Positions 15,028 through 60,659 of a stretch of DNA of 64,000 bases are shown here, piece after piece; positions within the stretch are counted from its first letter, which is position 1; each line of letters begins with the position of its first letter. The notes under the pieces are model-generated. The model was not told where the DNA came from. It did no database searches and saw only the letters and a program-made list of their open reading frames with translations. Origin of the DNA: Macrostomum lignano (Eukaryota); NCBI GenBank assembly GCA_002269645.1, contig NIVC01001321.1:214858-278857 (forward strand). The letters run 5' to 3'. A program made the translations under genes and the position numbers.

Positions 15028-16894
<1,867 letters not shown>

Positions 16895-33646: not shown

Positions 33647-35799
33647 GTTGCTGAAATATTTGTCTATAGACATTAATCAACAAAATAAATAAACTTTGTT
33701 ATGTAGGCAACATAAAAATATCGATAAAGTTAATAACAAACAAAGGATTACCTTGGCTATAGAATATGGCCTAGTAAATTGCTTGAAGCCATATAAGCTA
33801 TGTCATTTAGAGTTACAATTTCAAAATTTTAATTTAAATATAGAAACACATTAGGTAATTTACTTACATTTGTCTTATATTTTTCATTTCTAGATAAGAT
33901 CACTACATCAAGAGAATTCAGTAAAGCATTTAAAACTTAAAAAGGCTGGGGATAATAGCAAACTAAGTATTGATAGCAATCAATATACAAAACAAAGTTC
34001 CTAGTCAATAAAGACACTAGACAATAATTATATAATCATGTAATCACTTAGATATTAACAGAAGACATTTGCAAAAAATACTTTAACACTGATTTAAAAT
34101 TATTAATTTTGTAATAAATTATGCTACAGAGGGTTTTTAATTTACTAATAACAGTAACTAACCAGTATTCATTAATAATATCCTAGCTAGCTTTTTGAAA
34201 GCAAAAAAATATAAATGTATAGTATGGTTTGTTAAAAGGAAAAGGAAACAAGAAATATTTTTTTCTACATATACAATAGATCTATACCCCGTAGTAGTAA
34301 TTTTTTAATTTTATTTATTTTATCAGAGTATGTTATTATGTATTGGGCGCATTTCCAGGTACAGGTATGACATGAGGTATTGAGTACTGCAATGCAAATT
34401 TAACATACTTCTACAAAGAAGCTGATAGTGATACTACTGACTTTTTTCTTACTACCAAAAAGTGAACACTGTTAACTAAAACCTGACTCAAGTGTGTCTT
34501 TATATATAAAAATAAAAAACGCTTTAACATTGTCACGCTGTCAACTCATCAGCTGAAAATTGACAATCGATTCGAGAAGCTTGAATCTGTACACGAGTCG
34601 GTGCGAAAAAAGGTATTTAAAATAGAAATGAATAAATTTACTGAAAATAATAAATATTCATCGATGTGTGTTAAAATAACCAGAGACCTATCATAAAAGG
34701 ACGCAAGGTTTTATATTTTATTAAAATTAACTATACAAACATCGTATTTTAAAGTTATAGAAAGTTATCGTGGGGCCCGGGCCCCGCCCGGCCGATCGAA
34801 AGCCGAAGCCGAAACTCTAAAAGCTAAAATTTACTATCGCAACCAAGATTTCGCGTTACATTAACTGGTTTATTCTATTTAGTTTATTTCTTATTTTAGT
34901 TACTGTTAAAATTGAATAATGTACAAATAAATAAATAGACCTTACTTGTATACTTACTTTTATTTTTAAGAGTTTTCTAATACTAATTGACAATAGTGTA
35001 ATGGCTTTGCTTTGTGCATGTGTAATGAATTTGCAACGATGTGATGCTATAATACACATGTAATAGTAAAAGTTTAAAAGGTTAACATCTACCAATAGTA
35101 ATCCTAATTATTGAAGATGTTCAATTTTTTATGTTAATTTGATAAATAGATATCAGGTACAATAATAGTAATGACTTTTTGCAGTGGATTTAGTGAAGCT
35201 AATATATGCATTTTGTAAAAATTTTATTTATTATACTTATAGAATTGTACAATAGTCATAGAATAGATTAGCTGATAATTATGATAAGATAATCAGATCA
35301 GTATAAGTCTGCAGCAATTAATTAACAAATTTCAAAAAAATTTAAAGTAATTCTTGTGGCTTTAAAAGCCATATATTTAAATTGGCATACCTTTTAAAAT
35401 AATTTTTTTTATTTGTATCCACTATTGCTTTTAGTTTTTCAAATACCATAAATGTTGTTATATTACTATTTAGTCTTGAATCATAGTTTTCTAACATTAT
35501 TTTGAAATAGCCTTGAAAAAGTATGATAAAATCTTTGTATTTGCAAGATTTTCTATAAAAATAATCCACTTATAGAAATACTTCAGGATAAAATCTTGAA
35601 GTTGGTAGTTTTGAAAGGTGTTTTATTTTAAGTGCATTGTATTTTAACTACTTTAATTCATTCTTAGAGTAAACTAGCAATCTTCGCCCCCCGTTGGGGG
35701 ACATCTGGATAGAATCTCTGCTCTCTACAGGTAACAAAAAGCCTTCTCAAAGACAACAGACAAACTGCTCAAATAAAGTGCAATGCAAAAAGAAATCAT

Positions 35800-36440
35800 C
35801 CCAAGACAGCAAGCATCCCCCAGATAGCAAGCATCCCCCAAATAGCAAGCATCCCCAAGATAGCAAGCATCTTCCAGATAGAAAGCATTCACTAGATAGC
35901 AAGCATCCCCCAAATAGCAAGCATCCCCCAGATAGAAAGCATCCCCCAAATAGCAAGCATCCCCCAGATAGCAAGCATCCCCCAGATAGCAAGCATCCCC
36001 CAGATAGCACAGATAGCAAGCATCCCCCAGATAGCAAGCATCCCCAAAATAGCAAGCATCCCCCAGATAGCAAGCATCCCCCAGATAGCACAGATAGCAA
36101 GCATCCCCCAGATAGCAAGCATCCCCAGATAGCAAGCATCCCCAAATAGCAAGCATCCCCAGATAGCAAGCATCCCCCAAATAGCAAGCATCCCTCAGAT
36201 AGCAAGCATCCCCCAGATAGCAAGCATCCCCCAGATAGCAAGCCTCCCCCAGATAGCAAGCATCCCCCCTCCCGGATAACAAGCATCCCCCAAATAGCAA
36301 GCATCCCTCAGATAGCAAGCATCCCCCAGATAGCAAGCATCCCCCAGATAGCAAGCATCCCCCCTCCCAGATAGCAAGCATCCCCCAGATAGCAAGCATC
36401 CCCCAGATAGCAAGCATCCCCAAATAGTAAGCATCCACCA
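35800..36440. repeat. 18-bp satellite (GATAGCAAGCATCCCCCA)n in H1; also 39235-40050, 52065-52625, 57080-57690
   Basis: 6-aa GDACYL/GMLAIW period in the pseudo-ORFs. Confidence 0.95.
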
Positions 36441-36529
36441 GACAATAAGTAGCTAGTGCAACAATTTCCTTAGCTCTATAGTGGCTCCTTTAAAATTGGC
36501 ATGACGCTTACTTTTAAGTTTGGAATTGT

Positions 36530-38530
36530 GTATCTTTTATGTTCGACAGGGTGGCTCTTTTATGTTTGGCATGGTGGCTCTTTTATGTTTGACATGGTGG
36601 CTCTTTAATGTTCGAAATGGTGGCTCTTTAATATTTGACATGGTGGCTCTTTAATGTTTGACATGGTGGCTCTTTAATGTTTGACATGGTGTCTCTTTAA
36701 TGTTCGACAGGGTGACTCTTTAATGTTCGAAATGGTGGCTGTTTAATATTTGACATGGTGGCTCTTTAATGTTTGACATGGTGGCTCTTTAATGTTTGAC
36801 ATGGTGACTCTTTTATGTTCTACATGGTGTCTCTTTAATGTTTGACATGGTGGCTCTTTTATTTTTGGAATGGTGTCTCTTTAATGTTTGACATGGTGGC
36901 TCTTTTACGTTTGACATGGTGGCTCTTCTATGTTTGACATGGTGGTTCTTTGATGTTTGACATGGTGACTCTTTTATGTTCTACATGGTGGCTCTTTAAT
37001 GTTTGATTCGGGGTTTTTTTAATGTCTGACATGGTGTCTCTTTAATGTTTGACATGGTGGCTCTTTTATGTTTGACATGGTGGCTCTTTAGTGTTTGAAA
37101 TAGTGACTCTTTAATGTTCGACATGGTGGCTCTTTAATGTTCTTCATGGTAGCTCTTTTATGTTTTACATGGTGGCTTTTTAATGTTTGACATGGTGACT
37201 CTTTTATGTTCTACATGGTGGCTCTTTTATGTTCGACATGGTGGCTCTTTTATGTTTGACATGGTGGCTCTTTTATGTTTGACATGGTGGCTCTTGTATG
37301 TTCGACATGGTGGCTCTTTTAGGTTTGAAATAGTGGCTCTTTAATGTTCGACATGTTGGCTCTTTAATGTTTGACATTGTGGCTCTTTAATGTTTTACAT
37401 GGTGGCTCTTTTATGTTCGATATGGTGGTTCTTTTATGTTTGACATGGTGGCTCTTTAATGTTCGACACGGTGGCTCTTTAATGTTCGACATAGTGGCTC
37501 TTTTATGTTTGATTCGGGGTTTTTTTAACGTCTGACATGGTGTCTCTTTAATGTTCGACATGGTGGCTCTTTAAAGTTTGACATGGTGGTTCTTTACTGT
37601 TTGACATGGAGTCACATATATGTTTGACTTGGTGGCTCTTTTATGTTTAACATGGTGGCTCTTTAATGTTGGACATGGTGGCTCCTTAATTTTTGACATG
37701 GTGGCTCTTTAATGTTTGACATGGTGGCTATTTTATGCTTGACATGGTGGCTTTTTACTGTTTGACGTGGAGTCACATATATGTGTGACATGGTGGCTCT
37801 TTAATGTTTGACATGATGGCTCTTTTATGTTTGACATGGTGGCTTTTTTATGTTTGACATGGTGGCTTTTTAATGTTCGACATGGTGGCTCTTTTAGGTT
37901 TGACATGGTGGCTCTTGTATGTTCTACATGGTGGCTCTTTAATGTTTGACATGGTGGCTCTTTTATGTTCAACATGGTGGCTCTTTTATGCTTGACATGG
38001 TGGCTCTTTACTGTTTGACATGGAGTCACATATATGTTTGACATGGTGGCTCTTTTATGTTTGACATGGTGGCTCTTTAATGTTTGACATGACTCTTTAA
38101 TGTTCCACAATGTGGCTCTTTAATGTTTGATAAGGTGGCTCTTTTAGGTTTTAAATGGTGGCTATTTAATGTTTGACAAGGTGGCTCTTGTATGTTGGAC
38201 ATGGTGGCTCTTTAATGTTTGACATGGTGGCTCTTTAATGTTCGATATGGTGGCTCTTTAATGTTAGACATGGTGGCTCTTTAATGTTAGACATGATGGC
38301 TCTTTAATGTTCGACATGGTGGCTCTTTAATGTTAGACATGGTGGCTCTTTAATGTTAGACATGGTGGCTCTTTAATGTTAGACATGATGGCTCTTTAAT
38401 GTTAGACATGATGGCTCTTTAATGTTAGACATGATGGCTCTTTAATGTTAGACATGATGGCTCTTTAATGTTCGACATGGAGTCACATATATGTTCGACA
38501 TGGTGGCTCTTTAATATTTGACATTGTGCT
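36530..38530. repeat. 23-bp satellite (AATGTTTGACATGGTGGCTCTTT)n in H1; also 40105-41640, 52720-56360, 57745-59520
   Basis: 23-aa MSNIKEPPCQTLKSHHVKHKRAT period equals 3 x 23 bp. Confidence 0.95.
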
Positions 38531-38589
38531 TTTTTGTGTTTAGCATTTTGTGTTTTTAAGGTGTTTAATAAAAAAATCTTTTTGCACTA

Positions 38590-38647
38590 CTAAGATTCGA
38601 ACCCAGGTCGCTGCATTAGCAGTCCAGTCTGTTCGCATCTATGCTAT
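38590..38647 (-). other. tRNA-like A-box/B-box cassette in H1; copies at 41700-41757, 43725-43782, 47016-47072, 50986-51042, 56422-56479, 59576-59633
   Basis: TAGC[A/C]TAGA..G A-box, anticodon arm CTGGA-CTGCTAA-TGCAG, 4-nt variable loop, T-arm CTGGG-TTCGAAT-CTTAG, then a T-run. Acceptor stem does not pair. Confidence 0.7.
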
Positions 38648-39110
38648 TTCTTGTCAATTGGAGAACATGAATTGTGGCCCTTATAATTAAATTCTTATAG
38701 CAAATCGGTTAGAGTAAAAAGTTATGACATAATCAATTTCTCAGTCAGCCAGTATCAGTGTCAATTTAAGTTAGCAATATGATTACGCAATTTCAATCAA
38801 GTTGTGTGTGCATTTCTTCGGCACTGTTTTCAACTTGTTGTGATGCAATCTTTATCAGAATTGAAATTCAGTCAGTCAGTTTTTTCTCTAGCATTCTTAC
38901 AATGCATTCCAGGTCGAAAGAGCTGCTTGACCTTTGCAAAAAAAGCATGTTTTTCGAATATTTAATCCCTTTAATACTGAGCAATTTCTTAGCCAAGATG
39001 CATGTACCGTCCCAGGAAAATTTCTGATCGAATGGTGCAAGTTTGAAGAAAATCGGTTGAGCCGTTTTTTCTGAAATGTATCTCACACATACATACACAC
39101 AGACATTTCA

Positions 39111-42100
39111 CTAGCAATCTTTGCCCCCCGATGGGGGACATCTGGATAGAATCCTTGTTCTTTACAAATAACAAATAGACAGCAAAAAAAGCCTTCATAA
39201 AAAACAACAGACATTCCCTCTTAAAAACAAAACATCCCAAGACAGCAAGCATCCTCAGACAGCATTCAAACATCGATCCCCAAATAGCAAGCATCCCCCA
39301 GACTGCAAGCATCCCCCAGACTGCAAGCATCCCCCAGACTGCAAGCATCCCCCAGACTGCAAGCATCCCCCAGATAGCAAGCATCCCCCCGATAGAAAGC
39401 AACCCCAGATAGCAAGCATCCCCCCGATAGAAAGCAACCCCAGATAGCAAGCATCCCCCCGATAGAAAGCAACCCCAGATAGCAAGCATCCCCCCGATAG
39501 AAAGCAACCCCAGATAGCAAGCATCCCCCCGATAGAAAGCAACCCCAGATAGCAAGCATCCCCCAGATAGCAAGCATTCCCCCAGACCCCAGATAGTAAG
39601 CATCCCCCAGATAGCAAGCATCCCCCAGATAGCAAGCATTCCCCCAGACCCCAGATAGTAAGCATCCCCCAGATAGCAAGCATCCCCCAGATAGCAAGCA
39701 TCCCCCAGATAGCAAGCATCCCCCAGATAGCAAGCATTCCCCCAGACCCCAGATAGTAAGCATCCCCAGATAGCAAGCATCCCCCAGATAGCAAGCATCC
39801 CCAGATAGCAAGCATCCCCCAGATAGCAAGCATCCCCCAGATAGCAAGCATCCCCCAGATAGCAAGCATCCCCCAGATCGCAAGAATCCCCAGACAGCAA
39901 GCAAACCCTGATAGCAAGCATAACCTGGATACAAAGAGACCTTATAGATATCTAGCAACCCCCTCTCAGATAGCAAGTACTCTCCACCCCCAAGAGCAAG
40001 CATCCCCCTGATAGCAAGTATCCATCCTTAAATAGCAAGCATCCACCAGAGAACAAGTAGCTAGTGCAGCAATTTCCTTAGCTTTATAATGGTTCCATTT
40101 TGTTTGGCATGACACTTCTTTTATGTTTGAAATGGTGTCTCTTTTTTTAAAAAGGTGGCTCTTTAATGTTTGACATGGTGGCTCTTCTATGTTTGACATG
40201 GTAGCTCTTTTGTGTTTGACATGGTGGCTCTTTAATGTTTGACATGGTGGCTCTTCTATGTTTGACATGGTAGCTCTTTTGTGTTTGACATGGTGGCTCT
40301 TCTATATTTGACATGGTGTCTTCTATATTTGACGTGGTGGCTCTTTTGTGTTTGACATGATAGCTCTTTAATGTTTGACATGGTGGCTCTTCTTGTTTGA
40401 CATGGTAGCTCTTTATTGTTTGACATGGTGGCTCCCTTATGTGTGACATGGTGTCTTTTTTATGTTTAAGGTTTGACATGGAGTCATATATGTTTGACAT
40501 GGTGGCTCTTTTATGTGTTTTATCTCTTTTATGAGTAAACAAACAAGCTTTTTAATGTTTGACATGGTGGCTCAATAATGTTTTGACATGGTGGCTCAAT
40601 AATGTTTTGACATGGTCTCTCTTTTATGTTCAATGTTTGACATGGAGTCACATATATGTTTGACATAGTGGCTCTTTTATGTTTGAGAGGGTGGCTCTTT
40701 AATTTTCACCATGATGGCGCTTTAATGTTTGACATAGAGACACGTATAGTATATGTTTGACATGGTGGCTCTTTTATGTTCGAAATGGTGGCTCTTTTAT
40801 GTTCGACATGGTGGCTCTTTTTTGTTTGGCATGGTGGCTCTTTTATGTTTGACATGGTGGCTCTTTTATGTTTGACATGGTGGCTCTTTTATGTTCGACA
40901 TGGTGGCTCTTTTATGTTTGACATGGTGGCTCCTTTTTGTTGATATGATGGCTCTTTTATGTTCTACATGGTAACTCTTTTATGTTTGATACGGTGGCTT
41001 TTCAATGTCTGACATGGGGGCTCTTTAATGTTTGACATGGTGGCTCTTTAATGTTTGACATGGGGGCTCTTTAATGTTTGACATGGTGGCTCTTTAATGT
41101 TAGACAAAGTGGCTCTTAAATGTTTGACATGATGGCTCTTTTATGTTTGACATGGTGGCTCTCTAATGTTTGACATGGTGGCTCTTTAATGTTAGACAAA
41201 GTGGCTCTTAAATGTTTGACATGATGGCTCTTTTATGTTTGACATGGTGGCTCTTTAATGTTCGAAATGGTGGCTCTTTAATGTTCGAAATGGTGGCTCT
41301 TTTATGTTTGACATGGTGGCTCTTAAATGTTAGACATGGTGGCTCAATGTTCGACATGATGGCTCTTTAATGTTTGAAATGGTGGCTTTGTAATGTTAGA
41401 CATGGTGGCTTTGTAATGTTAGACATGGTGGCTCTTTAATTTTCGACATGGTGGCTCTTTAATGTTAGACATGGTGGCTCTTTAATGTTCGACATGGTGG
41501 CTCTTTAATGTTTGACATGGTGGCTCTTTAATGTTTGACATGGTGGCTCTTTAATGTTCGACATGGTGGCTCTTTAATGGTCGACATGGTGGCTCTTTAC
41601 TGGTCGACATGGTGGCTCTTTAATGTTTGACATTGTGCTTTTTTGTGTTTAGCATTTTGTGTTTTTAAGGTTTTTGAATAAAAAAATCTTTTTGCACTAC
41701 TAAGATTCGAACCCAGATCGCTGCATTAGCAGTCCAGTCTGTTCGCATCTATGCTATCTCTTTTCAATTGGAGATCATGAATTGTGGCCCTTATAATTAA
41801 ATTCTTATAGCAAATCGGTTAGAGTAAAAAGTTATGACATAATCAATTTCTTAGTCAGCCAGTATCAGTGTCAATTCAAGTTAGCAATATTGTTACGCAA
41901 TTTAAATCAAGTTTTGTGTGCATTTGTTCGGCACTGTTTTCAACTGGTTGTGATGTAATCTTTATCACAATTGGAATTCAGTCAGTCAGTTTTTTCTCTA
42001 GCATTCTTACAATGCATTTCAGGTCGAAAGAGCTGCTTGACCTTTGCAAAAAAGCATGTTTTTCGAATATTTAATCCCTTTAATATTGAGCAATTTCTTA

Positions 42101-42227
42101 GCCAGGATGCATGTACCGTGCCAGGAAAATTTCTGATCAAATGGTGCAAGTTTGAAGAAAATCGGTTAAACCAATTTTTCTGAAATCTATCGCATACCGA
42201 CAGACAACTCATTTTCAGTATATTGGA
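39111..42227 (-). mobile_element. Helitron-like unit H2, nested in H1 at an A|T site
   Basis: A|CTAG + hairpin at 39111; ends ...CAGTATATTGGA|T at 42227; rejoined flanks restore the H1 terminus. Confidence 0.8.
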
Positions 42228-42273
42228 TTTTTAGTATATAAAGGAGAAGATAGGAAGATTTAGTATATGTAGA

Positions 42274-44277
42274 CTAGCAATCAGCGCCCCCCGTTGGGGA
42301 GCCAAAAAAATGCAGTACAAGTTTTTTTTAATAAACTACATGTAAGCGTCTCTTTGCATTATAGTTTGTAAGCCTTGACATGTCAGAAAATCCCCCCACA
42401 AGCCTTAGCATATCAACCCCCTTGACATCTTAGCAATGCCCCATAAGCCTTGAAATCTTAAAAAATCTGTCAACCTTTTAACCCTAACCCTAACCCTAAC
42501 CCTAAAGCATTGACATTTCAGTAATTCTCTCCAACAGTCATTATAGCACTACAGCATTATAGCGATTCCCTGCAAGCCTCGACATCGTAGGGATTCCCAA
42601 ATGAATCTCTTAACTTCGACATGAAGCTTCTTTTATTTTTTACATTACGCTTTTTCTATCAGCGATCCCTCCCGTGAGCCAACAAATAATGAAAAAAAGT
42701 TTTCAATATACTACATGTAGCTTGACTTTAGCCTTGACATCTCATTTATTCCCCCATGAGCCTTGACATCTCAGCTATCCCCCCGTAAGCCTTGACATGT
42801 CAGCTATGGCCCCCATAAACCTTGAAATCTAAAAAATCCCCTGTTAACCTTGAAACCCGCTAAAATATAACCCTCAACCCAAACCTGACCTAAACCTAAC
42901 TTTAACCCAACCTAAAGCCTTGAAATCTCAGCAATTCTTCTCCCCTAAGCCTTGACATTTTAGTGATTCCTTCTTCAAGAATCACAGCACTATAACGATT
43001 CCCTCCAAGCCTTGACATCGTAGCAATTCCCAAATGAATCTTTTAACTTCGACATGACTCTTCTTTTATGTATACATAGTGCTTCTTTTCTTTTTTACAT
43101 GACTCTTCTTCTATCAGCGCCCCCCGTGGCGAGCCAACAAAGAATGTAATAAAAAAATTGAGTAAAGTACATGTACTTTGAAGTAGTTTCTGACTTTTGC
43201 TTTGACAGCTCAAACCCCCCCGTAATCTCAGTTTTTCTCCGTAAGCCTTGACATCTCAGTAAGTCTCCCCAGCACAGCACAATAGCTTCATTTAATTTTT
43301 ACATGACACTTCTTTCAGGTCTGACATGACGCTTCGTTTGATTTTTACATGACGCTTCTTTTATTCTTCCATGACGCTTCTATGATATCTCAAATGACAC
43401 TTCCATTAGTTTTTATATAAGGCTTTTTTAAAATGACGCTTCTATGATTGTTTACATGACGCTTCTATGATTGTTTATATGACGCTTCTATGATTGTTTA
43501 TGTGACGCTTTTATGATTTTTTACATGACGCTTCTATGATTTTTTTCATGACGCTTCTATGATTGTTTATATGACGCTTCTATGATTGTTTACATGACGC
43601 TTCGATGATTGTTTACATGACGCTTCTATGATTTTTTACATGACGCTTCTATGCCTTTTTAAATGACGCCTTTTGTCCTTTATTTGTCCTTTAATAAAAG
43701 CTTTTAATAAAAAACTTTTCACTACTAAGATTCGAACCCAGGTCGCTGCATTTGCAGTCCAGTCTGTTCACATCTAGGCTAGCTTTTATCGAATTTATAA
43801 ATGAAATTGTAGCACTTATATAATTTAGCACTCACTCACGAAGCAGTTATGACATAATCAATTTCCCAGGCAAGTCAGTATCAGTCTCAATTTAAGTTGA
43901 CAATATGGTTACGCAATCTAAATCACGTCTGGTGCTACGCTTCCACACTGCATTTTCAATACTGTGACGCAATTCAAGTTGGAGTTACAATTCAGTTATG
44001 ATGCAATCTATTTCAGAATCAGAATTCAACCAGTCAGTTTTTTTCTAGCATTCTTACAATGCATTTCAAGTCGAAAAGTTTGCTTGACCTTTGCAAAAAA
44101 GCATGTTTTTCGAGTATTTAATGCCTTTAGCATCAAGCAATTTCTTAGCCAAGACACATGTACCGTCACGGGAAAATTTCTGATCGAACAGTGCAAGTCT
44201 CATGAAAATCGGTTAAGCCATTTTTTCTCTAATCGATTACAAGCAAGCAAGCAAGATTTTCATTTTTAGTATATGGA
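42274..44277 (-). mobile_element. Helitron-like unit H3 (second subfamily)
   Basis: GA|CTAGCAATCAGCGCCCCCCGTTGGGG start; AGCCTTGACATCTCAG repeats; variant 23-bp array at 43290-43680; ends TTTTAGTATATGGA. Confidence 0.75.
42479..42505 (-). repeat. Interstitial telomeric repeat, (TAACCC)4 on + = (TTAGGG)n on -
   Basis: Four perfect units; degenerate copy at ~42870-42915. Confidence 0.85.
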
Positions 44278-47200: not shown

Positions 47201-47965
47201 AGTCAACAATATGGTTACGCAATCTAAATCTAAATCAAATGGCGCTGGCTTGAATTGTGGAGTTGCGATAAAGTAGGGTTTGCGATATGGGAGAGTGTAC
47301 AATGAGTATATAAAGTAAAAAGCATAGAAATCTTCTTTTCAATGCTGTGATTTTAATTTTTCGAATTTCAGCAAACAAATTATGTTCCCGAACTCAGCGT
47401 TTCTAGCTCTTTCCAGTAATACAAGGCTCTCTTCTGAAAGTAAAAAACTCGAAGCACAAACAACGGTTGAACATTCCTGCTTTAAAGTATTCAAATTCAA
47501 AAGGTGTACATTCAGCGCCAGCTACAGTGAGAGGCCTGCAAGTTGATGCATTGAAATTAACAACCAAGCCAATGCCCAGGACTAATTGAATAACGACACC
47601 CGCCCCTCAATTTCAATAACTTAAAGGTGTTGTGCAACCTTTCAACGCTTGTAGCTCTCCACGCGAGTGTAGAGAACCAATGCTATAGTTGGCACTGAGT
47701 TATGATGCAATACAATTCCATCGGCAGTCAGACTGCTTCTCAATCGGAAAGAACTGTTTGAACTTAAAAAACTTGGCGAAAAATCGAGTTTTTCGAATAT
47801 TTAAGCCCGAAAAAATGAAGCAATTTCTTAGAAAAATTTTATGTACCTGCGCACCATCAATACGCATCGAATGCAGAAGACCCCAGGAAATTCCGACCAC
47901 GCAAAGTCAAGTTAAACGACGGTTCCTATAGATAGGTACATAGTTTTGATTTTTAGTATATTGGA
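44278..47965 (-). mobile_element. Helitron-like unit H4 (third subfamily; duplicated 3' module; contains the SINE)
   Basis: GA|CTAGCCAATTCCAACCCCCGTTGGGG start; AAAGAATCCCC and AGCCTTGACATCTCAG repeats; ends TTTTAGTATATTGGA. Confidence 0.75.
46472..46840 (-). mobile_element. Full-length tRNA-head SINE with 10-bp TSD (TAATGTCTTA)
   Basis: TSD at 46462-46471 and 46841-46850; A-box TAGCCCAGCGG (46832-46822); B-box GGCTCGATTCC (46790-46780); A-rich tail AATAAAAAA. Confidence 0.85.
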
Positions 47966-50900: not shown

Positions 50901-51923
50901 TCTACCTGATTTACCTGACGTTTTTTTAGTTTTCTTTAGCTAAAAAGTTTAAAATTAATTTTTTTAATAAAATACTTCTACAATTTAAAAATTCGAACCC
51001 ACGTCGCTGCATTAGCAGGTCAGTCTGTTTACCTCTAGGCTATCTCTCAATGCTTTGATAACATAAATTGTAGCACTTACATAATTCAACACTTTCAAAA
51101 CTCCACGCACAGAGTAAATCACACGAAGCAGTTATGACATAATTTCTCAGCCAGTCTGTATCAGTTTCAAATAAAGTCACCAATATGGTTACGCAATCTA
51201 AATCTAAATTCAATGGCGCTGGCTTGAATTGTGGAGTTGCGATAAAGTAGGGGTTTGCGATATGGGAGAGTGTACAATGAGTATATAAAGTAAAATTCAA
51301 AGGAATCTTCTTTTTAATGCTGTGCTTTTAATTTTTCGAATCTAAGCAAAGAAATTATTCCCAAACTCAGCGTTTCAAGCTCTTTCTAGCAATACAAGGC
51401 TCTCTTCTGAAAGTAAAAAACTCGAAGCACAAACAATGATTGAACATTCCTGCTTTAAAGCATTCAAATTCATAAGGCGTACATTCAGCGCCAGCTACAG
51501 TGAGAGGCCTGCAAGTTGATGCATTGAAATTAACAACCAAGCCAGCCCATGAATAATTGAATAGCGACACCCGCCCCTCAATTAAAATGTGTTGCGCAAC
51601 CTTTCAACGCTTGTAGCTCTCCACGCGAGTGTGGAGAACCAATGCTATAGTTGGCACTGAGTTATGATGCAATACAATTCCATCGGCCGGCAGACTGCTT
51701 CTCAATCGGAAAGAACTGTTTGAACTTAAAAAACTTGGCGAAAAATCGAGTTTTTCGAATATTTAAGCCCGAAAAAATGAAGCAATTTCTTAGAAAAATT
51801 TTGTGTACCTGCGCACCATCAATACGCATCGAATGCAGAAAACCCCACGAAATTCCGACCATGTAGAGTCAAGTTAAGCGAAGGTTCGTATAGGTACATA
51901 GTTTTGATTTTTAGTATATTGGA
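47966..51923 (-). mobile_element. Helitron-like unit H5 (same subfamily as H4)
   Basis: Same termini as H4; 50990-51923 closely matches 47020-47965. Confidence 0.75.
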
Positions 51924-54900
51924 CTAGCAATCTTCGCCCCCCGATGGGGGACATCTGGATAGAATCTCTGTTCTCTACAAGTAACAAAAAGACAGCCAAA
52001 AAATCCTTCACAAAGACAACAGACAAACTGCTCAAATGAAGTGAATTGCAATAAGAAATCATCCCAAGACCACAAGCATCCCCCAGATAGCAAGCATCCT
52101 CCAGATAGCAAGCATTCCCCCAGATAGCAAGCATTCCCCAGATAGCAAGCATCCCTCAAATAGCAAGCATCCTCCAGATAGCAAGCATCCCCCAGATAGC
52201 AAACATCCCCAGATAGCAAGCATCCTCCAGATAGCAAGCATTCCCCCAGATAGCAAGCATTCCCCAGATAGCAAGAATCCCTCAAATAGCAAGCATCCTC
52301 CAGATAGCAAGCATCCCCCAGATAGCAAACATCCCCCAGATAGCAAGCATCCTCCAGATAGCAAGCATCCCCCAGATAGCAAGCATCCTCCAGATAGCAA
52401 GCATCCTCCAGATAGCAAGCATCCCCCAGATAGCAAACATCCCCCAGATAGCAAACATCCCCCAGATAGCAAGCATCCTCCAGATAGCAAGCATCCCCCA
52501 GATAGCAAGCATCCTCCAGATTGCAAGCATCCCCCAGATAGCAAGCATCCCCCAGATTGCAAGCATCCTCCAGATAGCAAGCATCCCCCAGATAGATAGC
52601 ATCCCCAAATAGCAAGCATCCACCAGACAATAAGTAGCTAGTGCGACAATTTTCTTAGCTTTATAGTAGCTCCTTTAAATTGGCATGGCGCTTTATACCT
52701 TTACATTTGAAATTGTATATCTTGAATGTTTGACATGGTGGCTCTTTATGTTTGACGTAGTGGCTCTTTAATGTTTGACATGGTAACTCTTTTATGTTTG
52801 ATATGGTGGCTCTTTTATGTTCGACATGGTGGCTCTTTAATGTTCGACATAGTAGCTCTTTAATTTTTGACATGGTAGCTCTTTAATTTTCGAATGGTGG
52901 CTGTTTTATGTTTGACATGGTGGCTTTTTAATGTTCGACATGGTGGCTCTTTTAGGTTTGAAACGGTGGCTCTTTAATGTTTGACATGGTGGCTCTTTTA
53001 GGTTTGAAATGGAGGCTCTTTAATGCTTGACAAGGTGGCTCTTTAATGTTTGACATGGTGGCTCTTTAATGTTTGACATGGTGGCTCTTTAATGTTTGAC
53101 ATGGTGGCTCCTTTAGGTTTGAAATGGTGGCTCTTTAATTTTCGAAATGGTGGCTCTTTAATGTTCGACATGGTGTCTGTTTTATGTTTGACATGGTGGC
53201 TCTTTAATGTTCGACATGGTGGCTCTTTAATGTTCGACATGGTCTGTTTTATGTTTGACATGGTGGCTCTTTAATGTTTGACATGGTGGCTCTTTAATTA
53301 TTAACATGGAAACTCTTTTATGTTTGATATGGTGCATACATGCGCAACTTTGGGAATCACCCGGCCGTTTCTATTGGCAACACACACATGTAAGTCGCTA
53401 TTGGCTGAGAGCAGTCACGTGACTACTACTCCGTCCAATAGCGACTTACATGTGTGTGTTGCCAATAGAAACGGCCGAGTGAATCCCCAGGTTGCGCCCA
53501 TGCATGATATGGTGGCTCTTTTATGTTCGACATGGTGGCTCCTTTAGGTTTGAAATGGTGGCTCTTTAATGTTTGACATGGTGGCTCTTTTAGGTTTGAC
53601 ATGGTGGCTCTTTAATGTTCGACATGGTGGCTCCTTTAGGTTTGAAATGGTGGCTCTTTAATGTTTGACATTGTGGCTCTTTAATGTTTGACATTGTGGC
53701 TCTTTAATGTTTGACATGGTGGCTTTTTAATGTTCGACATGGTGGCTCTTTTAGGTTTGAAACGGTGGCTCTTTAATGTTTGACATGGTGGCTCTTTTAG
53801 GTTTGAAATGGTGGCTCTTTAATGCTTGACAAGGTGGCTCTTTAATGTTTGACATGGTGGCTCTTCAATGTTCGACATGGTGGCTCTTTAATGTTTGACA
53901 TGGTAACTCTTTTATGTTTGATATGGTGGATTTTTAATGTTCGACATGGTGGCTCTTTAATGTTTGACATGGTGACTCTTTAATGTTTCACATGGTGGCT
54001 TTTTAATGTTCGAGATGGTGGCTCTTTAATGTTCGACATGGTGGCTCCTTTAGGTTTGAAATGGTGGCTCTTTAATGTTTGACATTGTGGCTCTGTAATG
54101 TTTGACATGGTGGCTCTTTAATGCTTGACAAGGTGGCTCTTTAATGTTTGACATTGTGGCTCTTTAATGTTTGACATGGTGGCTCTTTAATGTTCGACAT
54201 GGTGGCTCTTTAATGTTTGACATGGTAACTCTTTTATGTTTGATATGGTGGCTTTTTAATGTTCGACATGGTGGCTCTTTAATGTTTTACATGGTGGCTT
54301 TTTAATGTTCGACATGGTGGCTCTTTTAGGTTTGAAACGGTGGATCTTTAATGTTTGACATGGTGGCTCTTTAATGTTTGACATGGTGGCTTTTCTATGT
54401 TTGACATGGTGGCTCTTTAATGTTTGACATGGTGGCTCTTTAATGTTCGACATGGTGGCTCTTTAATGTTTGACATGGTGGCTCTTTAATGTTTGACATG
54501 GTGGCTCTATAATGTTTAACATGGTGGCTCTTTAATGTTTGACATGGTTGCTTTTCTATGTTCGACATGGTGGCTCTTTAATGTTCTTAATGGTGTGTGT
54601 TTTATGTTTGACATGGTGGCTTTTTAATGTTCCACATGGTGGCTCTTTAATGTTTGACATGGTGGCTCTTTAATGTTTGACATGGTGGCTTTTTAATGTT
54701 TGAAATGGTGGCTTTTCTATGTTTGACATGGTGGCTCTTATATGATTGACATGGTGGCTTTTTAATGTTCGACATGGTGGCTCTTTAATGTTCGACATGG
54801 TGGCTCTTTAATGTTTGACATGGTAACTCTTTTATGTTTGATATGGTGGCTTTTTAATGTTCGACATGGTGGCTCTATAATGTTTAACATGGTGGCTCTT

Positions 54901-56964
54901 TAATGTTTGACATGGTTGCTTTTCTATGTTCGACATGGTGGCTCTTTAATGTTCTTAATAGTGTGTGTTTTATGTTTGACATGGTGGCTTTTTAATGTTC
55001 CACATGGTGGCTCTTTAATGTTTGACATGGTGGCTCTTTAATGTTTGACATGGTGGCTTTTCTATGTTTGACATGGTGGCTCTTTAATGTGTGACATGGT
55101 GGCTTTTTAATGTTCGACATGGTGGCTCTTTAATGTTTGACATGGTGGCTCTTTAATGTTTGACATGGTGGCTCTATAATGTTTAACATGGTGGCTCTTT
55201 AATGTTTGACATGGTTGCTTTTCTATGTTCGACATGGTGGCTCTTTAATGTTCTTAATGGTGTGTGTTCTATGTTCGACATGGTGGCTCTTTAATGTTCT
55301 TAATGGTGTGTGTTTTATGTTTGACATGGTGGCTTTTTAATGTTTGAAATGGTGGCTTTTCTACGTTTGACATGGTGGCTCTTTTATGTTTGACATGGTG
55401 GCTTTTTAATGTTCGACATGGTGGCTCTTTAATGTTTGACATGGTAACTCTTTTATGTTTGATATGGTGGCTTTTTAATGTTCGACATGGTGGCTCTTTA
55501 ATGTTCGACATAGTGGCTCTTTTAGGTTTGAAATGGTGGCTCTTTAATGTTTGACATGGTGGCTCTTTAATGTTTGACATGGTGGCTTTTCTATGTTTGA
55601 CATGGTGGCTCTTTAATGTGTGACATGGTGGCTTTTTAATGTTCGACATGGTGGCTCTTTAATGTTTGACATGTTGGCTCTTTTATGTTTGACATGGTGG
55701 CTCTATAATGTTTGACATGGTGGCTCTTTAATGTTTGACATGGTTGCTTTTCTATGTTCGACATGGTGGCTCTTTAATGTTTGACATGGTTGTTTTTCTA
55801 TGTTTGACATGGTGGCTCTTTTATGTTTGACATGGTAGCTTTTTAATGTTCGAGATGGTGGCTCCTTTAGGTTTGAAATGGTGGCTCTTTAATGTTTGAC
55901 ATGGTGGCTCTTTAATGTTTGACATGGTGGCTCTTTAATGTTTGACATGGTGGCTTTTTTACGTTTGACATGGTGGCTCTTTTATGTTTGACATGGTGGC
56001 TTTTTAATGTTCGACATGGTGGCTCTTTAATGTTTGACATGGTGGCTCTTTAATGTTCGAGATGGTGGCTCTTTTAGGTTTGAAATGGTGGCTCTTTAAT
56101 GTTCGAGATGGTGGCTCCTTTAGGTTTGACATGGTGACTCTTTAATGTTTGACATGGTGGCTCTTTAATGTTCGAGATGGTGGCTCTTTTAGGTTTGAAA
56201 TGGTGGCTCTTTAATGTTTGACATGGTGGCTCTTTAATGTTCGACATGGTGGCTCTTTAATGTTTGACATGGTGGCTCTTTAATGTTTCACATGGTGGCT
56301 TTTCTATGTTTGACGTGGTGGCTCTCTTATGTTTGACATGGTGGCTCTTTTATTGCGCTTCTTTTATGTTTAGCAGTTTTTTGTTTTTAAGGTGTTTTAA
56401 TAAAAAAATTATTTTGCGCTACTAAGATTCGAACCCTTGTCGCTACATTAGCAGTCCAGTCTGTTCGCATCTAGGCTATCTCTTTTTAATTGGAGAATAT
56501 GAATTGTGGCCCTTATAATTCAATTCTTACAGCAAGTCAATTGGAGTAAAAAGTTATGACATAATCAATTTCTCAGTCAGCCAGTATCAGTCTCAATTTA
56601 AGTTAGCAATATGGTTACGCAATTTTAATCAAGTATTGTGTGCGTTTCTGTGGCACTGTTTTCAACTTGTTGTGATGCAATCTTTATCACAATCGGAATT
56701 CAGTCAGTCAGTTTTTTTCTAGCATTCTTACAATGTATTTCAAGTCGAAAATTTGGCTTGACCTTTGCAAAAAAGCATGTTTTTCGAATATTTAATCCCT
56801 TTAACATTGAGCAATTTCTTAGCCAAGATGCATGTACCGTCCCAGGAAAATTTCTGATCGAATGGTGCAAGTTTGAAGAAAATCGGTTAAACCAATTTTT
56901 CTGAAATCTATCGCATACCCACATACCCACATACCCACAGACAACTCATTTTTAGTATATAGGA
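51924..56964 (-). mobile_element. Helitron-like unit H6 (H1 subfamily; contains the MITE)
   Basis: GA|CTAG + hairpin; 3.6-kb 23-bp array; ends CAGACAACTCATTTTTAGTATATAGGA. Confidence 0.8.
53335..53506. mobile_element. 172-bp fold-back MITE with 8-bp TSD (ATATGGTG)
   Basis: TSD at 53327-53334 and 53507-53514; termini CATACATG...CATGCATG; perfect 43-bp inverted arms at 53362-53404 and 53435-53477. Confidence 0.9.
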
Positions 56965-59900
56965 AGCAATCTTCGCCCCCCGATGGGGGACATCTAAATA
57001 GAATATCTGTTCTCTAAAAGTAACAAAAAGACAGCGAAATAAAGCTTTCACAAAGACAACAGACATTCCATCTGTAAAGAAAACATCCCCAGACAGCATG
57101 CAAGCATCTCCCAGATAGCATGCAAGCATCTCCCAGATAGCAAGCATCCCCCAAATAGCAAGAATCCCCCAGATAGCAAGCATCCCCAGACAGCATGCAA
57201 GCATCTTCCAGATAGCAAGCATCCCCCAGATAGCAAGCATCCCCAGATAGCACGAATCCCCCAGATATAGCAAGCATCCCCAGACAGCACTCAAGCATCC
57301 CCCAGATAGCAAGAATCCCCCAGATAGCAAGCATCCCCAGACAGCATGCAAGCATCCCCCAGATAGCAAGCATCTCCCAGATAGCAAGAATCGCCCAGAT
57401 AGCAAGCATCCCCAGACAGCATGCAAGCATCCCCAGACAGCATGCAACCATCCCCCAGATAGCAAGCATCCCTGGATACAAAGAATCCTTATAGATAGCT
57501 AGCAACCCCCTCTCAGATAGCAAGTACCCTCCACTCCCCAAGAGCAAGCATCCCCCAATAGCAAGTTACCCCAGATAGCAAGCATTCTTCCGATAGCAAG
57601 CATCCCTCCCCCCAATAGCAAGCATCACTCAGATAGCAAGCATCCCCCTGATAGCAAGTATCCATCCTTAAATAGCAAGCATCCACCAGACATCAAGTAG
57701 CTAGTGCAATAATTTCCTTAGCTTTATAGTGGCTCCATTTTGTTTGGCATGACACTTCTTTTTATGTTTGACATGGTGGCTCTTCTATGTTTGACATGAA
57801 CACATGGTGTCTCTTCTATGTTTGACATGGTGGCTCTTCTATGTTTGACATGGTAGCTCTTTAATGTTTGACATGGAGTCACGTATATGTTTGACATAGT
57901 GGCTCTTTAATGATTGACATCGTGGTTCTTTAATGTTTGACATGGTGGCTCTTTAATGTTTGACATGGTGTCTCTGTTATGTTTGACATGATGGCTCAGT
58001 TGTTCGACATGGTGTCTCTTCTATGTTTGACATGGTGGCTCTTTTGTGTTTGACATTGTGGCTCTTTAATGTTTGACATGGTGGCTCTTCTATGTTTGAC
58101 ATGGTAGCACTTTAATCTTCGACATGGTGGCTCTTTATTTTTGACATTGTGGCTCTTTAATGTTTGATATGGAGTAATGTATATGCTTGACGTGGTGGTT
58201 CTTTTATGGTTGACATGGTGGCTTTTTTATGTTTGACACGGCGGCTCTTTTATGTTTGGCATGGTGGCTCTTTTATGTTCGACATGGTGGCTCAATAATG
58301 TTCGACATGGTGGCTCTTTTATGTTTGACATGGTGGCTCTTTTATGTTCGACATGGTGGCTCTTTTATGTTTGACATGCTGGCTCTTTTATGTTTGGCAT
58401 GGTGGCTCTTTAATGTTTGGCATGGTGGCTCTTTAATGTTTGACATTGTAGTTCTTTTATGTTTGATATGGTGGCTCTTTTATGTTCGACATGGTGGCTC
58501 TTTAATGTTCGACATGGTGGCTCTTTTAGGTTTGAAATGGTGGCTCTTTTGTGTTTGACATTGTGGCTCTTTAATGTTTCACATGGTGGCTCTTCTATAT
58601 TTGACATGGTAGCACTTTAATCTTCGACATGGTGGCTCTTTAATTTTTGACATTGTGGCTCTTTAATGTTTCACATAGTGGCTCTTTAATTTTTGACATT
58701 GTGGCTCTTTAATGTTTGACATGGTGGCTCTTTTATGTTTGACATTGTGGCTCTTTAATGTCTGACATGGTGGCTCAATAATGTTTGACATGCTGGCTCT
58801 TTAATGTTTTACATGATGGCTCTTTAATATTTGACATGGAGGCCCTTTTATGTTCGACATGGTGGCTCTTCAATGTTTGACATGGTACCTCTTTTATGTT
58901 CGACATAGTGGCTCTTTAATGTTTGACATGGTGACTCTTTTATGTTCTACATGGTGGCTCTTTAATGTTTGATAAGGTGGCTCTTTAATGTTCTTAATGG
59001 TGTCTGTTTTATGTTTGACATGGTGGCTCTTTAATGTTTGATAAGGTGGCTCTTTAATGTTCTTAATGGTGTCTGTTTTATGTTTGACATGGTGGCTCTT
59101 TTATGTTTGACATGGTGGCTCTTTAATGTTTTACATGGTGGCTCTTTTATGTTCTACATGGTAGATCTTTTATGTTCGACATGGTGGCTCTTTAATGTTT
59201 GATAAGGTGGCTCTTTAATGTTCGACATGGTGGCTCTTTTAGGTTTGAAATGGTGGCTCTTTTATGTTTGACATGGTGGCTTTTTAATGTTCGACATGTT
59301 GGCTCTTTAATGTTCTTTATGGTGTCTGTTTTATGTTTGACATGGTGGCTCTTTAATGTTTTGACATGGTGGCTCTTTTATGTTCTTGATGGTGTCTGTT
59401 TTATGTTTGACATGGTGGCTTTTTAATGTTCGACATGGTGGCTCTTTAATGTTCTTAATGGTAACTCTTTTTTTTGTTCGAAATAGTGGCTCTTTTATGT
59501 TTGACATTGCGCTTCTTTTATGTTTAGCAGTTTTTTGTTTTTAAGGTGTTTTAATAAAAAAATCATTTTGCGCTACTAAGATTGGAACCCAGGTCGCTAC
59601 ATTAGTAGTCCAGTCTGTTCACATCTAGGCTATCTTTTTTCAATTGGAGCACATGAATTGTGGCCCTTATAATTCAATTCTTACAGCAAGTCGGTTAGAG
59701 TAAAAATTTATGACATAATCAATTTCTCAGTCAGCCAGTATCAGTCTTAATTTAAGTTAGCAATATTGTTGCGCAATTTTAATCAAGTCTTGTGTGCGTT
59801 TCTGTGGCACTGTTTTCACCTTGTTGTGATGCAATCTTTATCAGAATTGAAATTCAGCCAGTCAGTTTTTTCTCTAGCATTCTTACAATGCATTTCAAGT

Positions 59901-60187
59901 CGAAAATTTTGCTTGACCTTTGCAAAAAAGCATGTTTTTCGAATATTTAATCCCTTTAACATTGAGCAATTTCTTAGCCAAGATGCATGTACCGTCCCAG
60001 GAAAATTTCTGATCGAATGGTGCAAGTTTGAAAAAAATCGGTTGAGCCAATTTTTCTGAAATCAATCGCATACCCATATACATACATACTTTGAATCTTT
60101 TGGCGAAAACGCGATGAAAATCGGTGAAGAATTGCAATCTGTAGAGCGTTATGGACATACAAATATTAGAGATTTAGTATATTTAGA
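56965..60187 (-). mobile_element. Helitron-like unit H7 (H1 subfamily; junction lacks the CT of CTAG; foreign 5' end)
   Basis: AGCAATCTTCGCCCCCCGATGGGGG start; ends AGATTTAGTATATTTAGA|T at 60187. Confidence 0.75.
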
Positions 60188-60367
60188 TTATTAATCATGA
60201 CACACTTATTTTTTGCTTTATCATAGAAATCATAGAAAATTCTATTAAAAGCTCCTCTAGATATTATTTTCCGAATGCTGAAGCTTAGCTGAAACAGAAT
60301 GCGATTTAGTTTGAATTAATTTGATTCAGAATTCGGCTGCCCTCAACCATTCCCACTCTTTTGCCAG

Positions 60368-60636
60368 GCGTCTGGTGTGAAAATTCTCGACGAAGTGCTG
60401 CAGGCCTTCAATGAGGTGAAGACACGGCACACGAGCCGCTACCTGCTGCTCGGCCTGATGAACAGCGACCGCGAGATTGGCGTTCTGAAGAAGGCGCCGT
60501 TGACGGCACCATATGAGGAGTTCCTGGCGGATTTGAAGGCCTATCAAGACCAGGGCCGGGGAGTGTACGGAGTGTACGATATCGAGTACGAGCTGGAGTC
60601 GAAACAGAAGCGAAACAAGCTGGTCTTTGTGAGCTG
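60368..60636 (+). CDS. CFL: Cofilin/ADF, first visible coding exon (initiator ATG not adjacent)
   Basis: Acceptor CTTTTGCCAG|GCG TCT GGT GTG gives (M)ASGVKILDEV...YGVYDIEY...RNKLVFVSW; donor TG|GTGAGT. Confidence 0.9.
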
Positions 60637-60659
60637 GTGAGTAAATGAAATGCGTTGTG

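What the first reader, a model, noticed from the sequence alone, without database searches (positions are those of the whole stretch)
35674..60187. 24.5-kb head-to-tail stack of seven non-autonomous Helitron-like elements from at least three subfamilies
Seen: the block starts A|CTAG and ends GA|T. Internal junctions read ...TAGTATAT(N)nGA|CTAG with no spacer at 42273/4, 44277/8, 47965/6 and 51923/4. Each CTAG is followed by a GC hairpin, there are no TSDs, and there is no RepHel ORF. Established: 5'-TC, a 3' hairpin plus CTRR, and A|T insertion define Helitrons, and rolling-circle replication gives tandem copies. Inference: because neighbours are different subfamilies, this is not one concatemer; it suggests repeated targeting of existing Helitron ends or mixed-circle integration, forming a Helitron landing pad.
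Basis: partly seen in the sequence, partly recalled or inferred. Interest (0 to 1): 0.85.

Follow-up and report, generated by a model that had tools for sequence, protein, structure and literature searches.

The report
Stacked Helitron transposons in a flatworm
A 24.5-kb block in the flatworm Macrostomum lignano is a real end-to-end pile of protein-less rolling-circle transposons (Helitrons) sitting in one A|T site that is empty in two sister copies of the locus; this arrangement is already known in other organisms, though how the pile formed is unresolved.

Summary
Window 35674-60187 is a head-to-tail stack of non-autonomous canonical Helitrons, all on the minus strand. On that strand each unit reads 5'-TC(C/T)..ATATACTAAA ... 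GC hairpin + 9-13 nt + CTAG-3'. The window is M. lignano contig NIVC01001321.1. So the block occupies one A|T site with no target-site duplication. No protein domain is detectable.

Corrections to the finding:
- There are nine 3' termini and six intact 5' termini, not seven of each.
- The family-C units are composites with an internal terminator, present twice.
- The four family-A units form two two-unit blocks with mosaic genealogies.
- The four joints between blocks are perfect CTAG|TC. Joints inside blocks are degenerate.

The "landing pad" idea is plausible but untested. One-step insertion of a pre-built composite, and in-situ duplication, are not excluded. Tandem Helitron arrays, directly abutting unrelated Helitrons, and insertion at another Helitron's 5' end are already in the literature. 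This is a new member of a known kind, of moderate interest.

The parts
35674..60187 (-). Whole Helitron stack (24,514 bp). It corresponds to NIVC01001321.1 positions 250531-275044. It is absent from two homologous loci.
35674..39110 (-). U1, family A (alpha type). 3' terminus (hairpin + CTAG) at 35674-35700. 18-bp array at 35800-36442. 23-bp array at 36533-38528. The 5' end lacks about 10 nt (junction CTAG|TGAAATG).
39111..42273 (-). U2, family A (beta type). Arrays at 39278-39921 and 40117-41637. Three 5'-end-like motifs lie in series at 42215-42273; the outermost is TCTACATATACTAAATC.
42274..44277 (-). U3, family B. It has its own interior (array 43285-43669). It shares the roughly 560-nt 5'-side segment with family A at about 77-78% identity. 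Both ends are perfect.
44278..47965 (-). Family C composite, copy 1. It consists of U5 (45349-47965, with a 5' end) plus U4 (44278-45348, no 5' end). An internal hairpin-CTAG terminus lies at 45349-45374. It carries a SINE-like insertion at 46476-46840.
47966..51923 (-). Family C composite, copy 2 (U6). It consists of U6b (49375-51923) plus U6a (47966-49374). It is colinear with copy 1 across the internal terminus, which here is mutated to CCTCAACGGGAG.
51924..56964 (-). U7, family A (alpha type). Arrays at 52073-52627 and 52720-56350, the latter interrupted by a 172-bp palindromic MITE at 53335-53506. The 5' end TCCTATATACTAAAAATG is intact.
56965..60187 (-). U8, family A (beta type). The 3' end reads ...GATTGCT, with AG lost. 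Arrays at 57100-57697 and 57802-59525. An extra leader of about 75 nt carries its own 5' end, TCTAAATATACTAAATC, which abuts host A.
35660..35673 (.). Left host flank ...TTAGAGTAAA. It is continuous with 60188 onward in the empty loci.
60188..60367 (.). Right host flank TTATTAATCAT... These 180 nt separate the stack from the first coding exon of a cofilin/ADF gene. That gene has exons at 60368-~60637 and ~62081-62252 on the + strand.

Best explanation
**What it is (shown).** The block is a stack of non-autonomous canonical Helitrons, all in minus-strand orientation. It occupies a single A|T site 180 nt upstream of a cofilin gene copy in Macrostomum lignano. It arose on this copy of the locus after that copy diverged from its two sister copies.

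**How such elements move (established knowledge).**
- A RepHel transposase encoded elsewhere mobilises them in trans.
- It nicks at A|TC and unwinds 5'->3'.
- It terminates at the hairpin plus CTAG.
- It joins the 3' end to the 5' end to form a circle, then integrates at A|T without a target duplication.

**How the stack formed (inference).** It grew by transposase-made 3'-end-to-5'-end joints, not by random insertion.
- About five mobile blocks are involved: [U8+U7], [U6], [U5+U4], [U3], [U2+U1].
- Three are composites that carry crippled internal junctions.
- Each block was added stepwise, exactly at an existing Helitron end or junction.
- The outer A|TC boundary offers both the A|T dinucleotide and the transposase's own cleavage site. 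An internal CTAG|TC joint mimics the circle junction.
- Later recombination or gene conversion among the units produced mosaics.
For: **Helitron identity.**
- 5'-TC ends and hairpin-plus-CTAG ends occur 6 and 9 times, all on one strand and far above chance.
- A precise empty site, with A|T and no TSD, is present in two independent homologous contigs.
- There are no coding domains.

**Non-random joining.**
- Four perfect CTAG|TC joints and one near-perfect joint.
- All 7 units share one orientation.

**Block view.**
- The C composites are colinear across their internal terminus.
- [U8 U7] and [U2 U1] share alpha/beta 3'-side types: 13 informative sites against 1, plus shared indels.
- Both A blocks start with the same variant 5' end, TCTA(A/C)ATATACTAAATCT.
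- Every inter-block joint is perfect and every intra-block joint is degenerate.

**Contrast with ordinary insertions.** Secondary insertions by other elements in the stack do have TSDs of 14 bp and 8 bp.

**Clustering.** In roughly 150 kb of M. lignano DNA examined, all copies lie in this one stack and none is solo.

**Literature.**
- Helitron circles carry exactly this junction (PMC5876387).
- Insertion at another Helitron's 5' end has been proposed for fungi (PMC5148889).
Against: - No allele with a partial stack was seen. The three loci are 1 full and 2 empty, so stepwise growth at this site is not shown.
- K2P distances between same-family units (0.05-0.10) overlap the divergence between the full and empty loci (0.03-0.10). 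Timing therefore cannot separate separate insertions from in-situ duplication.
- Internal joints are G|T, not A|T. Only the outer 5' boundary fits the simple A|T rule.
- The 5'-side segments of the A units group by neighbourhood (18 informative sites). This needs an extra conversion step under the block view.
- No genome-wide census, no autonomous partner and no read support could be obtained.
Confidence: 0.5

Rival explanations
1. One-step insertion. The 24.5-kb stack was assembled at another locus. It then transposed here as a single composite Helitron, using the 5' end of U8 and the 3' end of U1, with all internal terminators bypassed.
For: - The whole block sits in one A|T site with clean outer ends, and no intermediate allele exists among the three loci.
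- Composites with internal terminators are demonstrably propagated here, since the C unit is present twice.
- End bypass and compound Helitrons are documented (PMC4224331).
Against: - It requires bypass of eight terminator-like ends, five of them apparently intact.
- It only moves the question of how the perfect hetero-joints formed to another locus.
- No donor copy was seen, though the genome could not be searched.
Confidence: 0.25
2. Few founders plus in-situ amplification. Three or four elements (A, B, C) inserted here. The same-family neighbours arose locally by unequal crossing-over, replication slippage or gene conversion, helped by the long shared minisatellite arrays.
For: - Same-family units are adjacent, and in the 5'-side segment neighbours are each other's closest relatives (U1-U2 K2P 0.049, U7-U8 0.059; 18 informative sites).
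- Divergences fit the post-insertion time window.
- Mosaic genealogies show that recombination has acted.
Against: - The 3'-side and spacer segments pair U1 with U7 and U2 with U8, which lie at opposite ends of the stack (13 sites against 1).
- It does not explain the perfect joints between different families.
- A first duplication of a single unit has no flanking homology to act on.
- The array k-mer comparison gave no signal either way.
Confidence: 0.17
3. Mixed multimeric circles. Different Helitron circles recombined through shared sequence, or were ligated by the transposase, into a hetero-multimer that integrated once.
For: - Every joint has the form of the circle junction CTAG|TC (PMC5876387).
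- Families A and B share about 560 nt, and all families share their ends.
- Chimeric 5'/3' combinations exist among the A units.
Against: - No evidence for hetero-multimeric Helitron circles was found in the papers read.
- With the data available it cannot be distinguished from the explanations above.
Confidence: 0.05
4. Assembly artefact or not a Helitron. The stack is a mis-join of repeats, or a satellite or other transposon class.
For: The region is rich in minisatellites, and read support could not be checked.
Against: - The units differ by 5-23%, which is enough for long-read assembly.
- The outer boundaries match empty sites in two independent contigs to the base.
- The termini are strand-specific, with no inverted copies and hence no TIRs.
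- There is no TSD.
Confidence: 0.03

Closest known systems
Canonical (Helitron1/HLE1-type) non-autonomous Helitrons
   Same: - 5'-TC and 3'-CTAG ends.
- A GC hairpin about 10-13 nt before the 3' end.
- Insertion between A and T with no target duplication.
- No TIRs and no coding capacity.
   Different: Nothing structural. These M. lignano families (A, B, C), with 18-bp and 23-bp internal minisatellites, were not found in the literature held.
Tandem Helitron arrays attributed to rolling-circle replication. Reported in Myotis, in plant centromeres (Xiong et al. 2016) and on the D. pseudoobscura Y; cited in PMC5876387, PMC12001565 and 10.1101/2021.06.02.446622.
   Same: Head-to-tail copies with the 3' end joined directly to the 5' end, all in one orientation.
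   Different: - Those arrays are copies of one family, and in plants they often have many 5' ends and one 3' end.
- Here three families are mixed and 3' ends outnumber 5' ends (9 against 6).
Unrelated Helitrons lying directly next to one another in bat and maize (PMC4067079, section 15). [quoted passage not shown]
   Same: - Hetero-family abutment.
- The idea of insertion at a resident 5' end.
- Serial 5'-end motifs, as seen in U2 at 42215-42273.
   Different: - Here there are seven units and four perfect hetero- or inter-block joints at one site.
- Two empty sister loci prove the A|T boundaries.
Chimeric or compound Helitrons made by end bypass (Feschotte & Wessler 2001; Tempel 2007; HelibatN539 in PMC4224331)
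   Same: Units with an internal, bypassed terminator that are copied as a whole. Examples here are the C composite and probably the A alpha-beta block.
   Different: There is no captured host gene between the parts. The downstream part is itself a 5'-truncated Helitron.
Helraiser circle junction (PMC5876387)
   Same: Each internal joint, CTAG|TC, is the sequence formed when the transposase closes the circle.
   Different: Here the junction is chromosomal and joins different elements. There is no experimental link.
Satellite-carrying Helitrons and Helentrons (Heli2Xen in PMC12001565; DINE-1/HINE in PMC4067079; Paramecium Helitrons in PMC13085455)
   Same: Most of each unit is internal minisatellite array.
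   Different: Helentrons and Helitron2 have subterminal inverted repeats and T|T sites, which are absent here.

Membership tests
Canonical Helitron (non-autonomous) | 5' terminus begins with TC | tested here: met
   Six units begin TC(C/T). U1 is truncated by about 10 nt.
Canonical Helitron (non-autonomous) | 3' terminus ends with CTRR | tested here: met
   CTAG at 8 of 9 termini. U8 has lost the AG.
Canonical Helitron (non-autonomous) | Short GC-rich hairpin about 10-12 nt upstream of the 3' end | tested here: met
   All 9 termini fold with DNA parameters, at -4.6 to -6.9 kcal/mol. The hairpin lies 10-13 nt from the end.
Canonical Helitron (non-autonomous) | Insertion between host A and T without target-site duplication | tested here: met
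   The empty site ...GAGTAAA|TTATTAATC... is present in L003. L001 is the same with one SNP. This was tested for the stack as a whole, not for each unit.
Canonical Helitron (non-autonomous) | Similarity between copies ends at the termini, in different sequence contexts | tested here: met
   Within the stack, A, B and C units have different neighbours, and homology stops at TC and CTAG. No dispersed solo copy could be retrieved.
Canonical Helitron (non-autonomous) | A RepHel-encoding autonomous partner with matching ends in the same genome | not testable with these tools
   The M. lignano genome cannot be searched by DNA here. There is no RepHel remnant in the stack.
Helentron / Helitron2 | Subterminal inverted repeats and insertion between T and T | tested here: not met
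   The end motifs occur on one strand only, and the site is A|T.
Homomeric rolling-circle concatemer | All units are copies of one element with identical joints | tested here: not met
   There are three families. A against B is about 77% identical in the only shared segment, and C is unrelated apart from its ends. Same-family pairs could still be dimers.
Composite Helitron (end bypass) | An internal terminator is retained and the whole unit is copied | tested here: met
   C copy 1 and copy 2 are colinear across the internal hairpin-CTAG (89% over 444 nt). For the A alpha-beta block the evidence is mixed.
Helitron-end 'landing pad' (targeted integration) | Excess of 3'-end|5'-end joints genome-wide, and alleles with partial stacks | not testable with these tools
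   Only three copies of this locus were retrievable, 1 full and 2 empty.
TSD-forming DNA transposon or retroposon | Target-site duplication and/or TIRs at unit ends | tested here: not met
   None at any unit end. By contrast the nested SINE-like element has a 14-bp TSD and the MITE an 8-bp TSD.

The most novel reading that the evidence does not exclude
Resident Helitron ends, and chromosomal CTAG|TC joints that mimic the circle junction, may be preferred integration targets for the Helitron transposase, used in one fixed orientation. Helitron stacks would then grow as self-reinforcing landing pads that also manufacture new composite elements. This mode of target choice has been suggested from genome data but has not been demonstrated.
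Probability: 0.3. Interest if true: 0.6.

Novelty: new member of a known kind. Interest (0 to 1): 0.4.

Why it matters
- It is a clean natural example. The boundaries are proven to the base by two empty sister loci, and several Helitron families are joined exactly end to end at one site.
- Such loci are the raw material for asking how Helitrons choose targets and how chimeric or composite Helitrons arise. M. lignano is a transgenic-capable model in which this could be tested.
- Locally, 24.5 kb of repeats sits 180 nt upstream of the first coding exon of one of three cofilin gene copies. This may affect that copy's expression.
- It does not reveal a new kind of element.

Tried and rejected
**Attempts to retrieve other genomic copies.**
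1. A protein search with the 310-aa ORF spanning the U2|U1 joint gave no hits.
2. An exhaustive profile search with the conserved 97-aa ORF gave 0 hits.
3. Exact-motif scans of metagenome and viral collections gave 0 hits.
4. Four other M. lignano loci, plus 8 kb beyond the window, contained no copies.

**Look-ups that failed.** P0021 had no contig on record. Cluster members P0026 and P0027 then worked.

**tRNA or SINE identity.** ARAGORN and Rfam were negative for the tRNA-like pieces. The tRNA resemblance is by eye only.

**Coding content.** A Pfam scan of all stop-free stretches found nothing.

**Dating.** Comparing K2P between units with K2P between flanks gave overlapping ranges and is uninformative.

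**Array comparison.** K-mer sharing between the minisatellite arrays showed no clear pattern.

**Readings rejected.**
- Helentron/Helitron2: there are no inverted end copies and the site is A|T.
- A homomeric concatemer for the whole block: three families are present.
- Precise excision as the origin of the empty sites: two independent loci are intact.
- Chance: the motif counts are far above expectation.

**Papers not held.** Pritham & Feschotte 2007 and Du et al. 2009 could not be read.


Full report
**Source and setting**

The window is eukaryotic DNA crowded with minisatellites. A CRAL-TRIO ORF at 27698-28840 (-) is 99% identical to Macrostomum lignano BOX15_Mlig016597g1.

Locus L002 is 100% identical to the window. 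This places the window on GCA_002269645.1 contig NIVC01001321.1, with window position 1 at record position 214858. The block is therefore record positions 250531-275044.

A cofilin/ADF gene lies to the right on the + strand. Its first coding exon (ASGVKILDEV...) starts at 60368, directly after ...ttttgccag, and its second exon ends at 62252. The block ends 180 nt upstream of that exon and is in the opposite orientation.

**Checking the observation**

The boundaries and the four listed spacer-free junctions are as described.

On the minus strand every unit has the canonical Helitron layout:
- 5' end: TC(C/T)(A/T)(A)ATATACTAAA(A)AT.
- 3' end: a GC hairpin (-4.6 to -6.9 kcal/mol with DNA parameters), then 9-13 nt, then CTAG.

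The 5' core ATATACTAAA occurs 7 times (0.09 expected). The 3' pattern occurs 9 times (0 expected). All copies are on the minus strand, all are inside the block, and none is elsewhere in the window. Because no inverted copies of the ends exist, there are no TIRs.

**Empty sites**

The same assembly holds two further copies of this locus: L001 (NIVC01001689.1) and L003 (NIVC01001944.1). Both align to the window up to 35672/35673 and resume at 60188 (L001) or 60184 with a 4-nt overlap (L003).

| Locus | Sequence at the site |
|---|---|
| L003 (empty) | ...TTCTTAGAGTAAA\|TTATTAATCAT... |
| L001 (empty) | same, with G for the last A |
| Window (filled) | ...GAGTAAA[CTAG...TTTAGA]TTATTAATC... |

So the 24,514 bp occupy one A|T site, with no duplication and no deletion.

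Flank identity over +/-600 nt is 0.934-0.937 between the window and the empty loci, and 0.976 between the two empty loci. The insertion therefore arose on the window's lineage.

**Anatomy**

Self-comparison with tandem arrays masked gives three families.

- **Family A:** U1 35674-39110, U2 39111-42273, U7 51924-56964, U8 56965-60187. In Helitron sense each has a 5' segment of about 560 nt, a 23-bp array, a spacer, an 18-bp array, about 125 nt, and then the 3' end.
- **Family B:** U3 42274-44277. It shares only the 5' segment with A, at about 77-78% identity.
- **Family C:** two copies of one composite, U5+U4 (44278-47965) and U6b+U6a (47966-51923). They are colinear over their whole length, including an internal hairpin-CTAG terminus followed by CTGAGG... 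with no 5' end (45348/9 and 49374/5; 89% identity over 444 nt across it).

Joints in Helitron sense:

| Joint | Sequence | State |
|---|---|---|
| host \| U8 | A\|TC | clean outer boundary |
| U8 \| U7 | ...GCT\|TCC | AG lost |
| U7 \| U6 | CTAG\|TCC | perfect |
| U6b \| U6a | CTAG\|CTGAGG | no 5' end |
| U6a \| U5 | CTAG\|TCC | perfect |
| U5 \| U4 | CTAG\|CTGAGG | no 5' end |
| U4 \| U3 | CTAG\|TCC | perfect |
| U3 \| U2 | CTAG\|TCT | perfect |
| U2 \| U1 | CTAG\|TGAAATG | U1 5' end lacks about 10 nt |
| U1 \| host | CTAG\|T | clean outer boundary |

U2 carries three 5'-end-like motifs in series at 42215-42273. U8 has an extra leader of about 75 nt with its own 5' end.

No Pfam domain is found in any stop-free stretch of 45 aa or more on either strand. 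The elements are non-autonomous and carry no recognisable captured gene.

**Relationships inside the stack**

In the 5'-side segment, neighbours are closest:
- U1-U2 K2P 0.049.
- U7-U8 K2P 0.059.
- Cross-pairs 0.087-0.094.

In the 3'-side segment and the inter-array spacer the grouping is different. U1 pairs with U7 (alpha type) and U2 with U8 (beta type), with shared indels.

Counts of informative sites:

| Segment | (U1,U7)\|(U2,U8) | (U1,U2)\|(U7,U8) | (U1,U8)\|(U2,U7) |
|---|---|---|---|
| 3' side and spacer | 13 | 1 | 0 |
| 5' side | 1 | 18 | 4 |

So the A units are mosaics. The simplest reading is that [U8 U7] and [U2 U1] are two copies of a beta-alpha two-unit block. Both begin with the same variant 5' end, TCTA(A/C)ATATACTAAATCT. 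Their 5'-side segments were later homogenised within each block. Recombination in the long arrays, or template switching, could produce the same pattern. This is unresolved.

On the block view the stack is [U8U7] | [U6] | [U5U4] | [U3] | [U2U1]. All four joints between blocks are perfect. Every joint inside a block is degenerate. That fits older, inherited, crippled internal junctions and younger transposase-made outer joints. This last step is inference.

**Timing**

K2P between same-family units (0.05-0.10) overlaps K2P between the filled and empty loci in non-coding flanks (0.03-0.10). Dating cannot tell separate insertions from in-situ duplication.

The stack is old enough to have received two insertions of other element types, and both have TSDs:
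- A SINE-like element at 46476-46840 with a 14-bp TSD.
- A 172-bp palindromic MITE at 53335-53506 with an 8-bp TSD.

This contrasts with the TSD-free Helitron joints.

**Mechanism**

*Shown:* Helitron-type ends, A|T integration without a TSD, one orientation throughout, exact 3'-to-5' joints, and propagation of at least one composite as a unit.

*Established elsewhere:* RepHel nicks at A|TC, terminates at the hairpin plus CTAG, and closes a circle whose junction is CTAG|TC (PMC5876387). Terminator bypass gives composite elements (PMC4224331). Tandem arrays are ascribed to rolling-circle replication (cited in PMC5876387 and PMC12001565).

*Inferred:* the perfect joints between different families cannot come from random A|T insertion, which would give nested copies in either orientation. 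They need one of the following:
- (a) End-directed integration at the resident A|TC boundary or at a junction that mimics the circle junction.
- (b) Integration of a hetero-multimeric circle.
- (c) Transposition of a stack pre-built elsewhere by (a) or (b).

I favour stepwise end-directed accretion of about five blocks at confidence 0.5. One-step composite insertion is at 0.25. Founders plus in-situ amplification is at 0.17. The rest is small. All three available copies of the locus are either full or empty, so the decisive evidence, partial stacks or a donor locus, is missing.

**Comparison with what is known**

- Membership in canonical Helitrons is met on every testable feature. The autonomous partner could not be sought.
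- Helentron/Helitron2 features are not met.
- Head-to-tail Helitron arrays are known in bats, plants, Drosophila Y chromosomes and Xenopus (PMC5876387, PMC12001565, 10.1101/2021.06.02.446622).
[quoted passage not shown] - No paper on M. lignano Helitrons was found.

The finding is therefore a new member of a known kind. It is well documented, with an unusually clean empty-site proof and an informative pattern of perfect and degenerate joints.

**Limits**

- There was no DNA-level access to the rest of the M. lignano genome and none to reads.
- All attempts to fetch dispersed copies failed.
- The idea that the cofilin start codon comes from a trans-spliced leader rests on my memory of flatworm spliced leaders and was not tested.

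Noticed in passing
window 46462-46854: A SINE-like retroposon lies inside U5, with its body at 46476-46840 on the minus strand. It has a short A-tail and a 14-bp target duplication, TAATGTCTTA(T/C)CTA. Partial copies lie in the cofilin intron (61885-61989) and in L001 and L003. Its 5' end looks tRNA-like by eye, but ARAGORN and Rfam do not call it.
   Followed up: partly
window 53327-53514; L003 22086-22214: A 172-bp palindromic MITE interrupts the 23-bp array of U7. Its 63-nt arms are 94% complementary and it has an 8-bp target duplication, ATATGGTG. A second copy lies at the end of L003.
   Followed up: partly
window 60188-62252: The first coding exon of the cofilin/ADF gene starts at a splice acceptor (60367/8) with no in-frame ATG. 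The annotated proteins are 'partial'. The Met may come from a trans-spliced leader; this is from memory and untested. The Helitron stack lies only 180 nt upstream of this acceptor in one of three gene copies.
   Followed up: partly
window 1-35000 and 60600-63800: More than 25 mini- and microsatellite arrays, with periods of 4-54 nt, lie in and between genes. Many are GA-rich, and there are also (CTAA)n, (CTAT)n and (TGAC)n runs. The same arrays sit at the same places in L001 and L003 with different copy numbers.
   Followed up: no
window 16205-16894: Two pieces next to the (CTAT)n array recur at 99-100% identity in swapped order: 16205-16313 = 16786-16894, and 16313-16485 = 16586-16758. This could be a local rearrangement or an assembly quirk.
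   Followed up: no
window vs L001 (NIVC01001689.1) and L003 (NIVC01001944.1): One assembly holds three copies of this gene neighbourhood, with cofilin, CRAL-TRIO, CBM_21 and DUF4618 genes. Two copies are 2.4% apart and the third about 6.5% away. This fits the hidden polyploidy reported for M. lignano.
   Followed up: partly
window 38560-38640, 41670-41750, 43700-43790, 56390-56470, 59550-59630: The shared 5'-side segment of families A and B contains a stretch resembling a tRNA T-arm on the minus strand (GGGTTCGAATCTTAGTAGTG). Rfam and ARAGORN are negative. It may be an old captured tRNA or SINE fragment.
   Followed up: partly
window 20346-21800: A 484-aa ORF lies in a 67% GC island. It is part of a 687-aa annotated protein and has no Pfam domain.
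   Followed up: no
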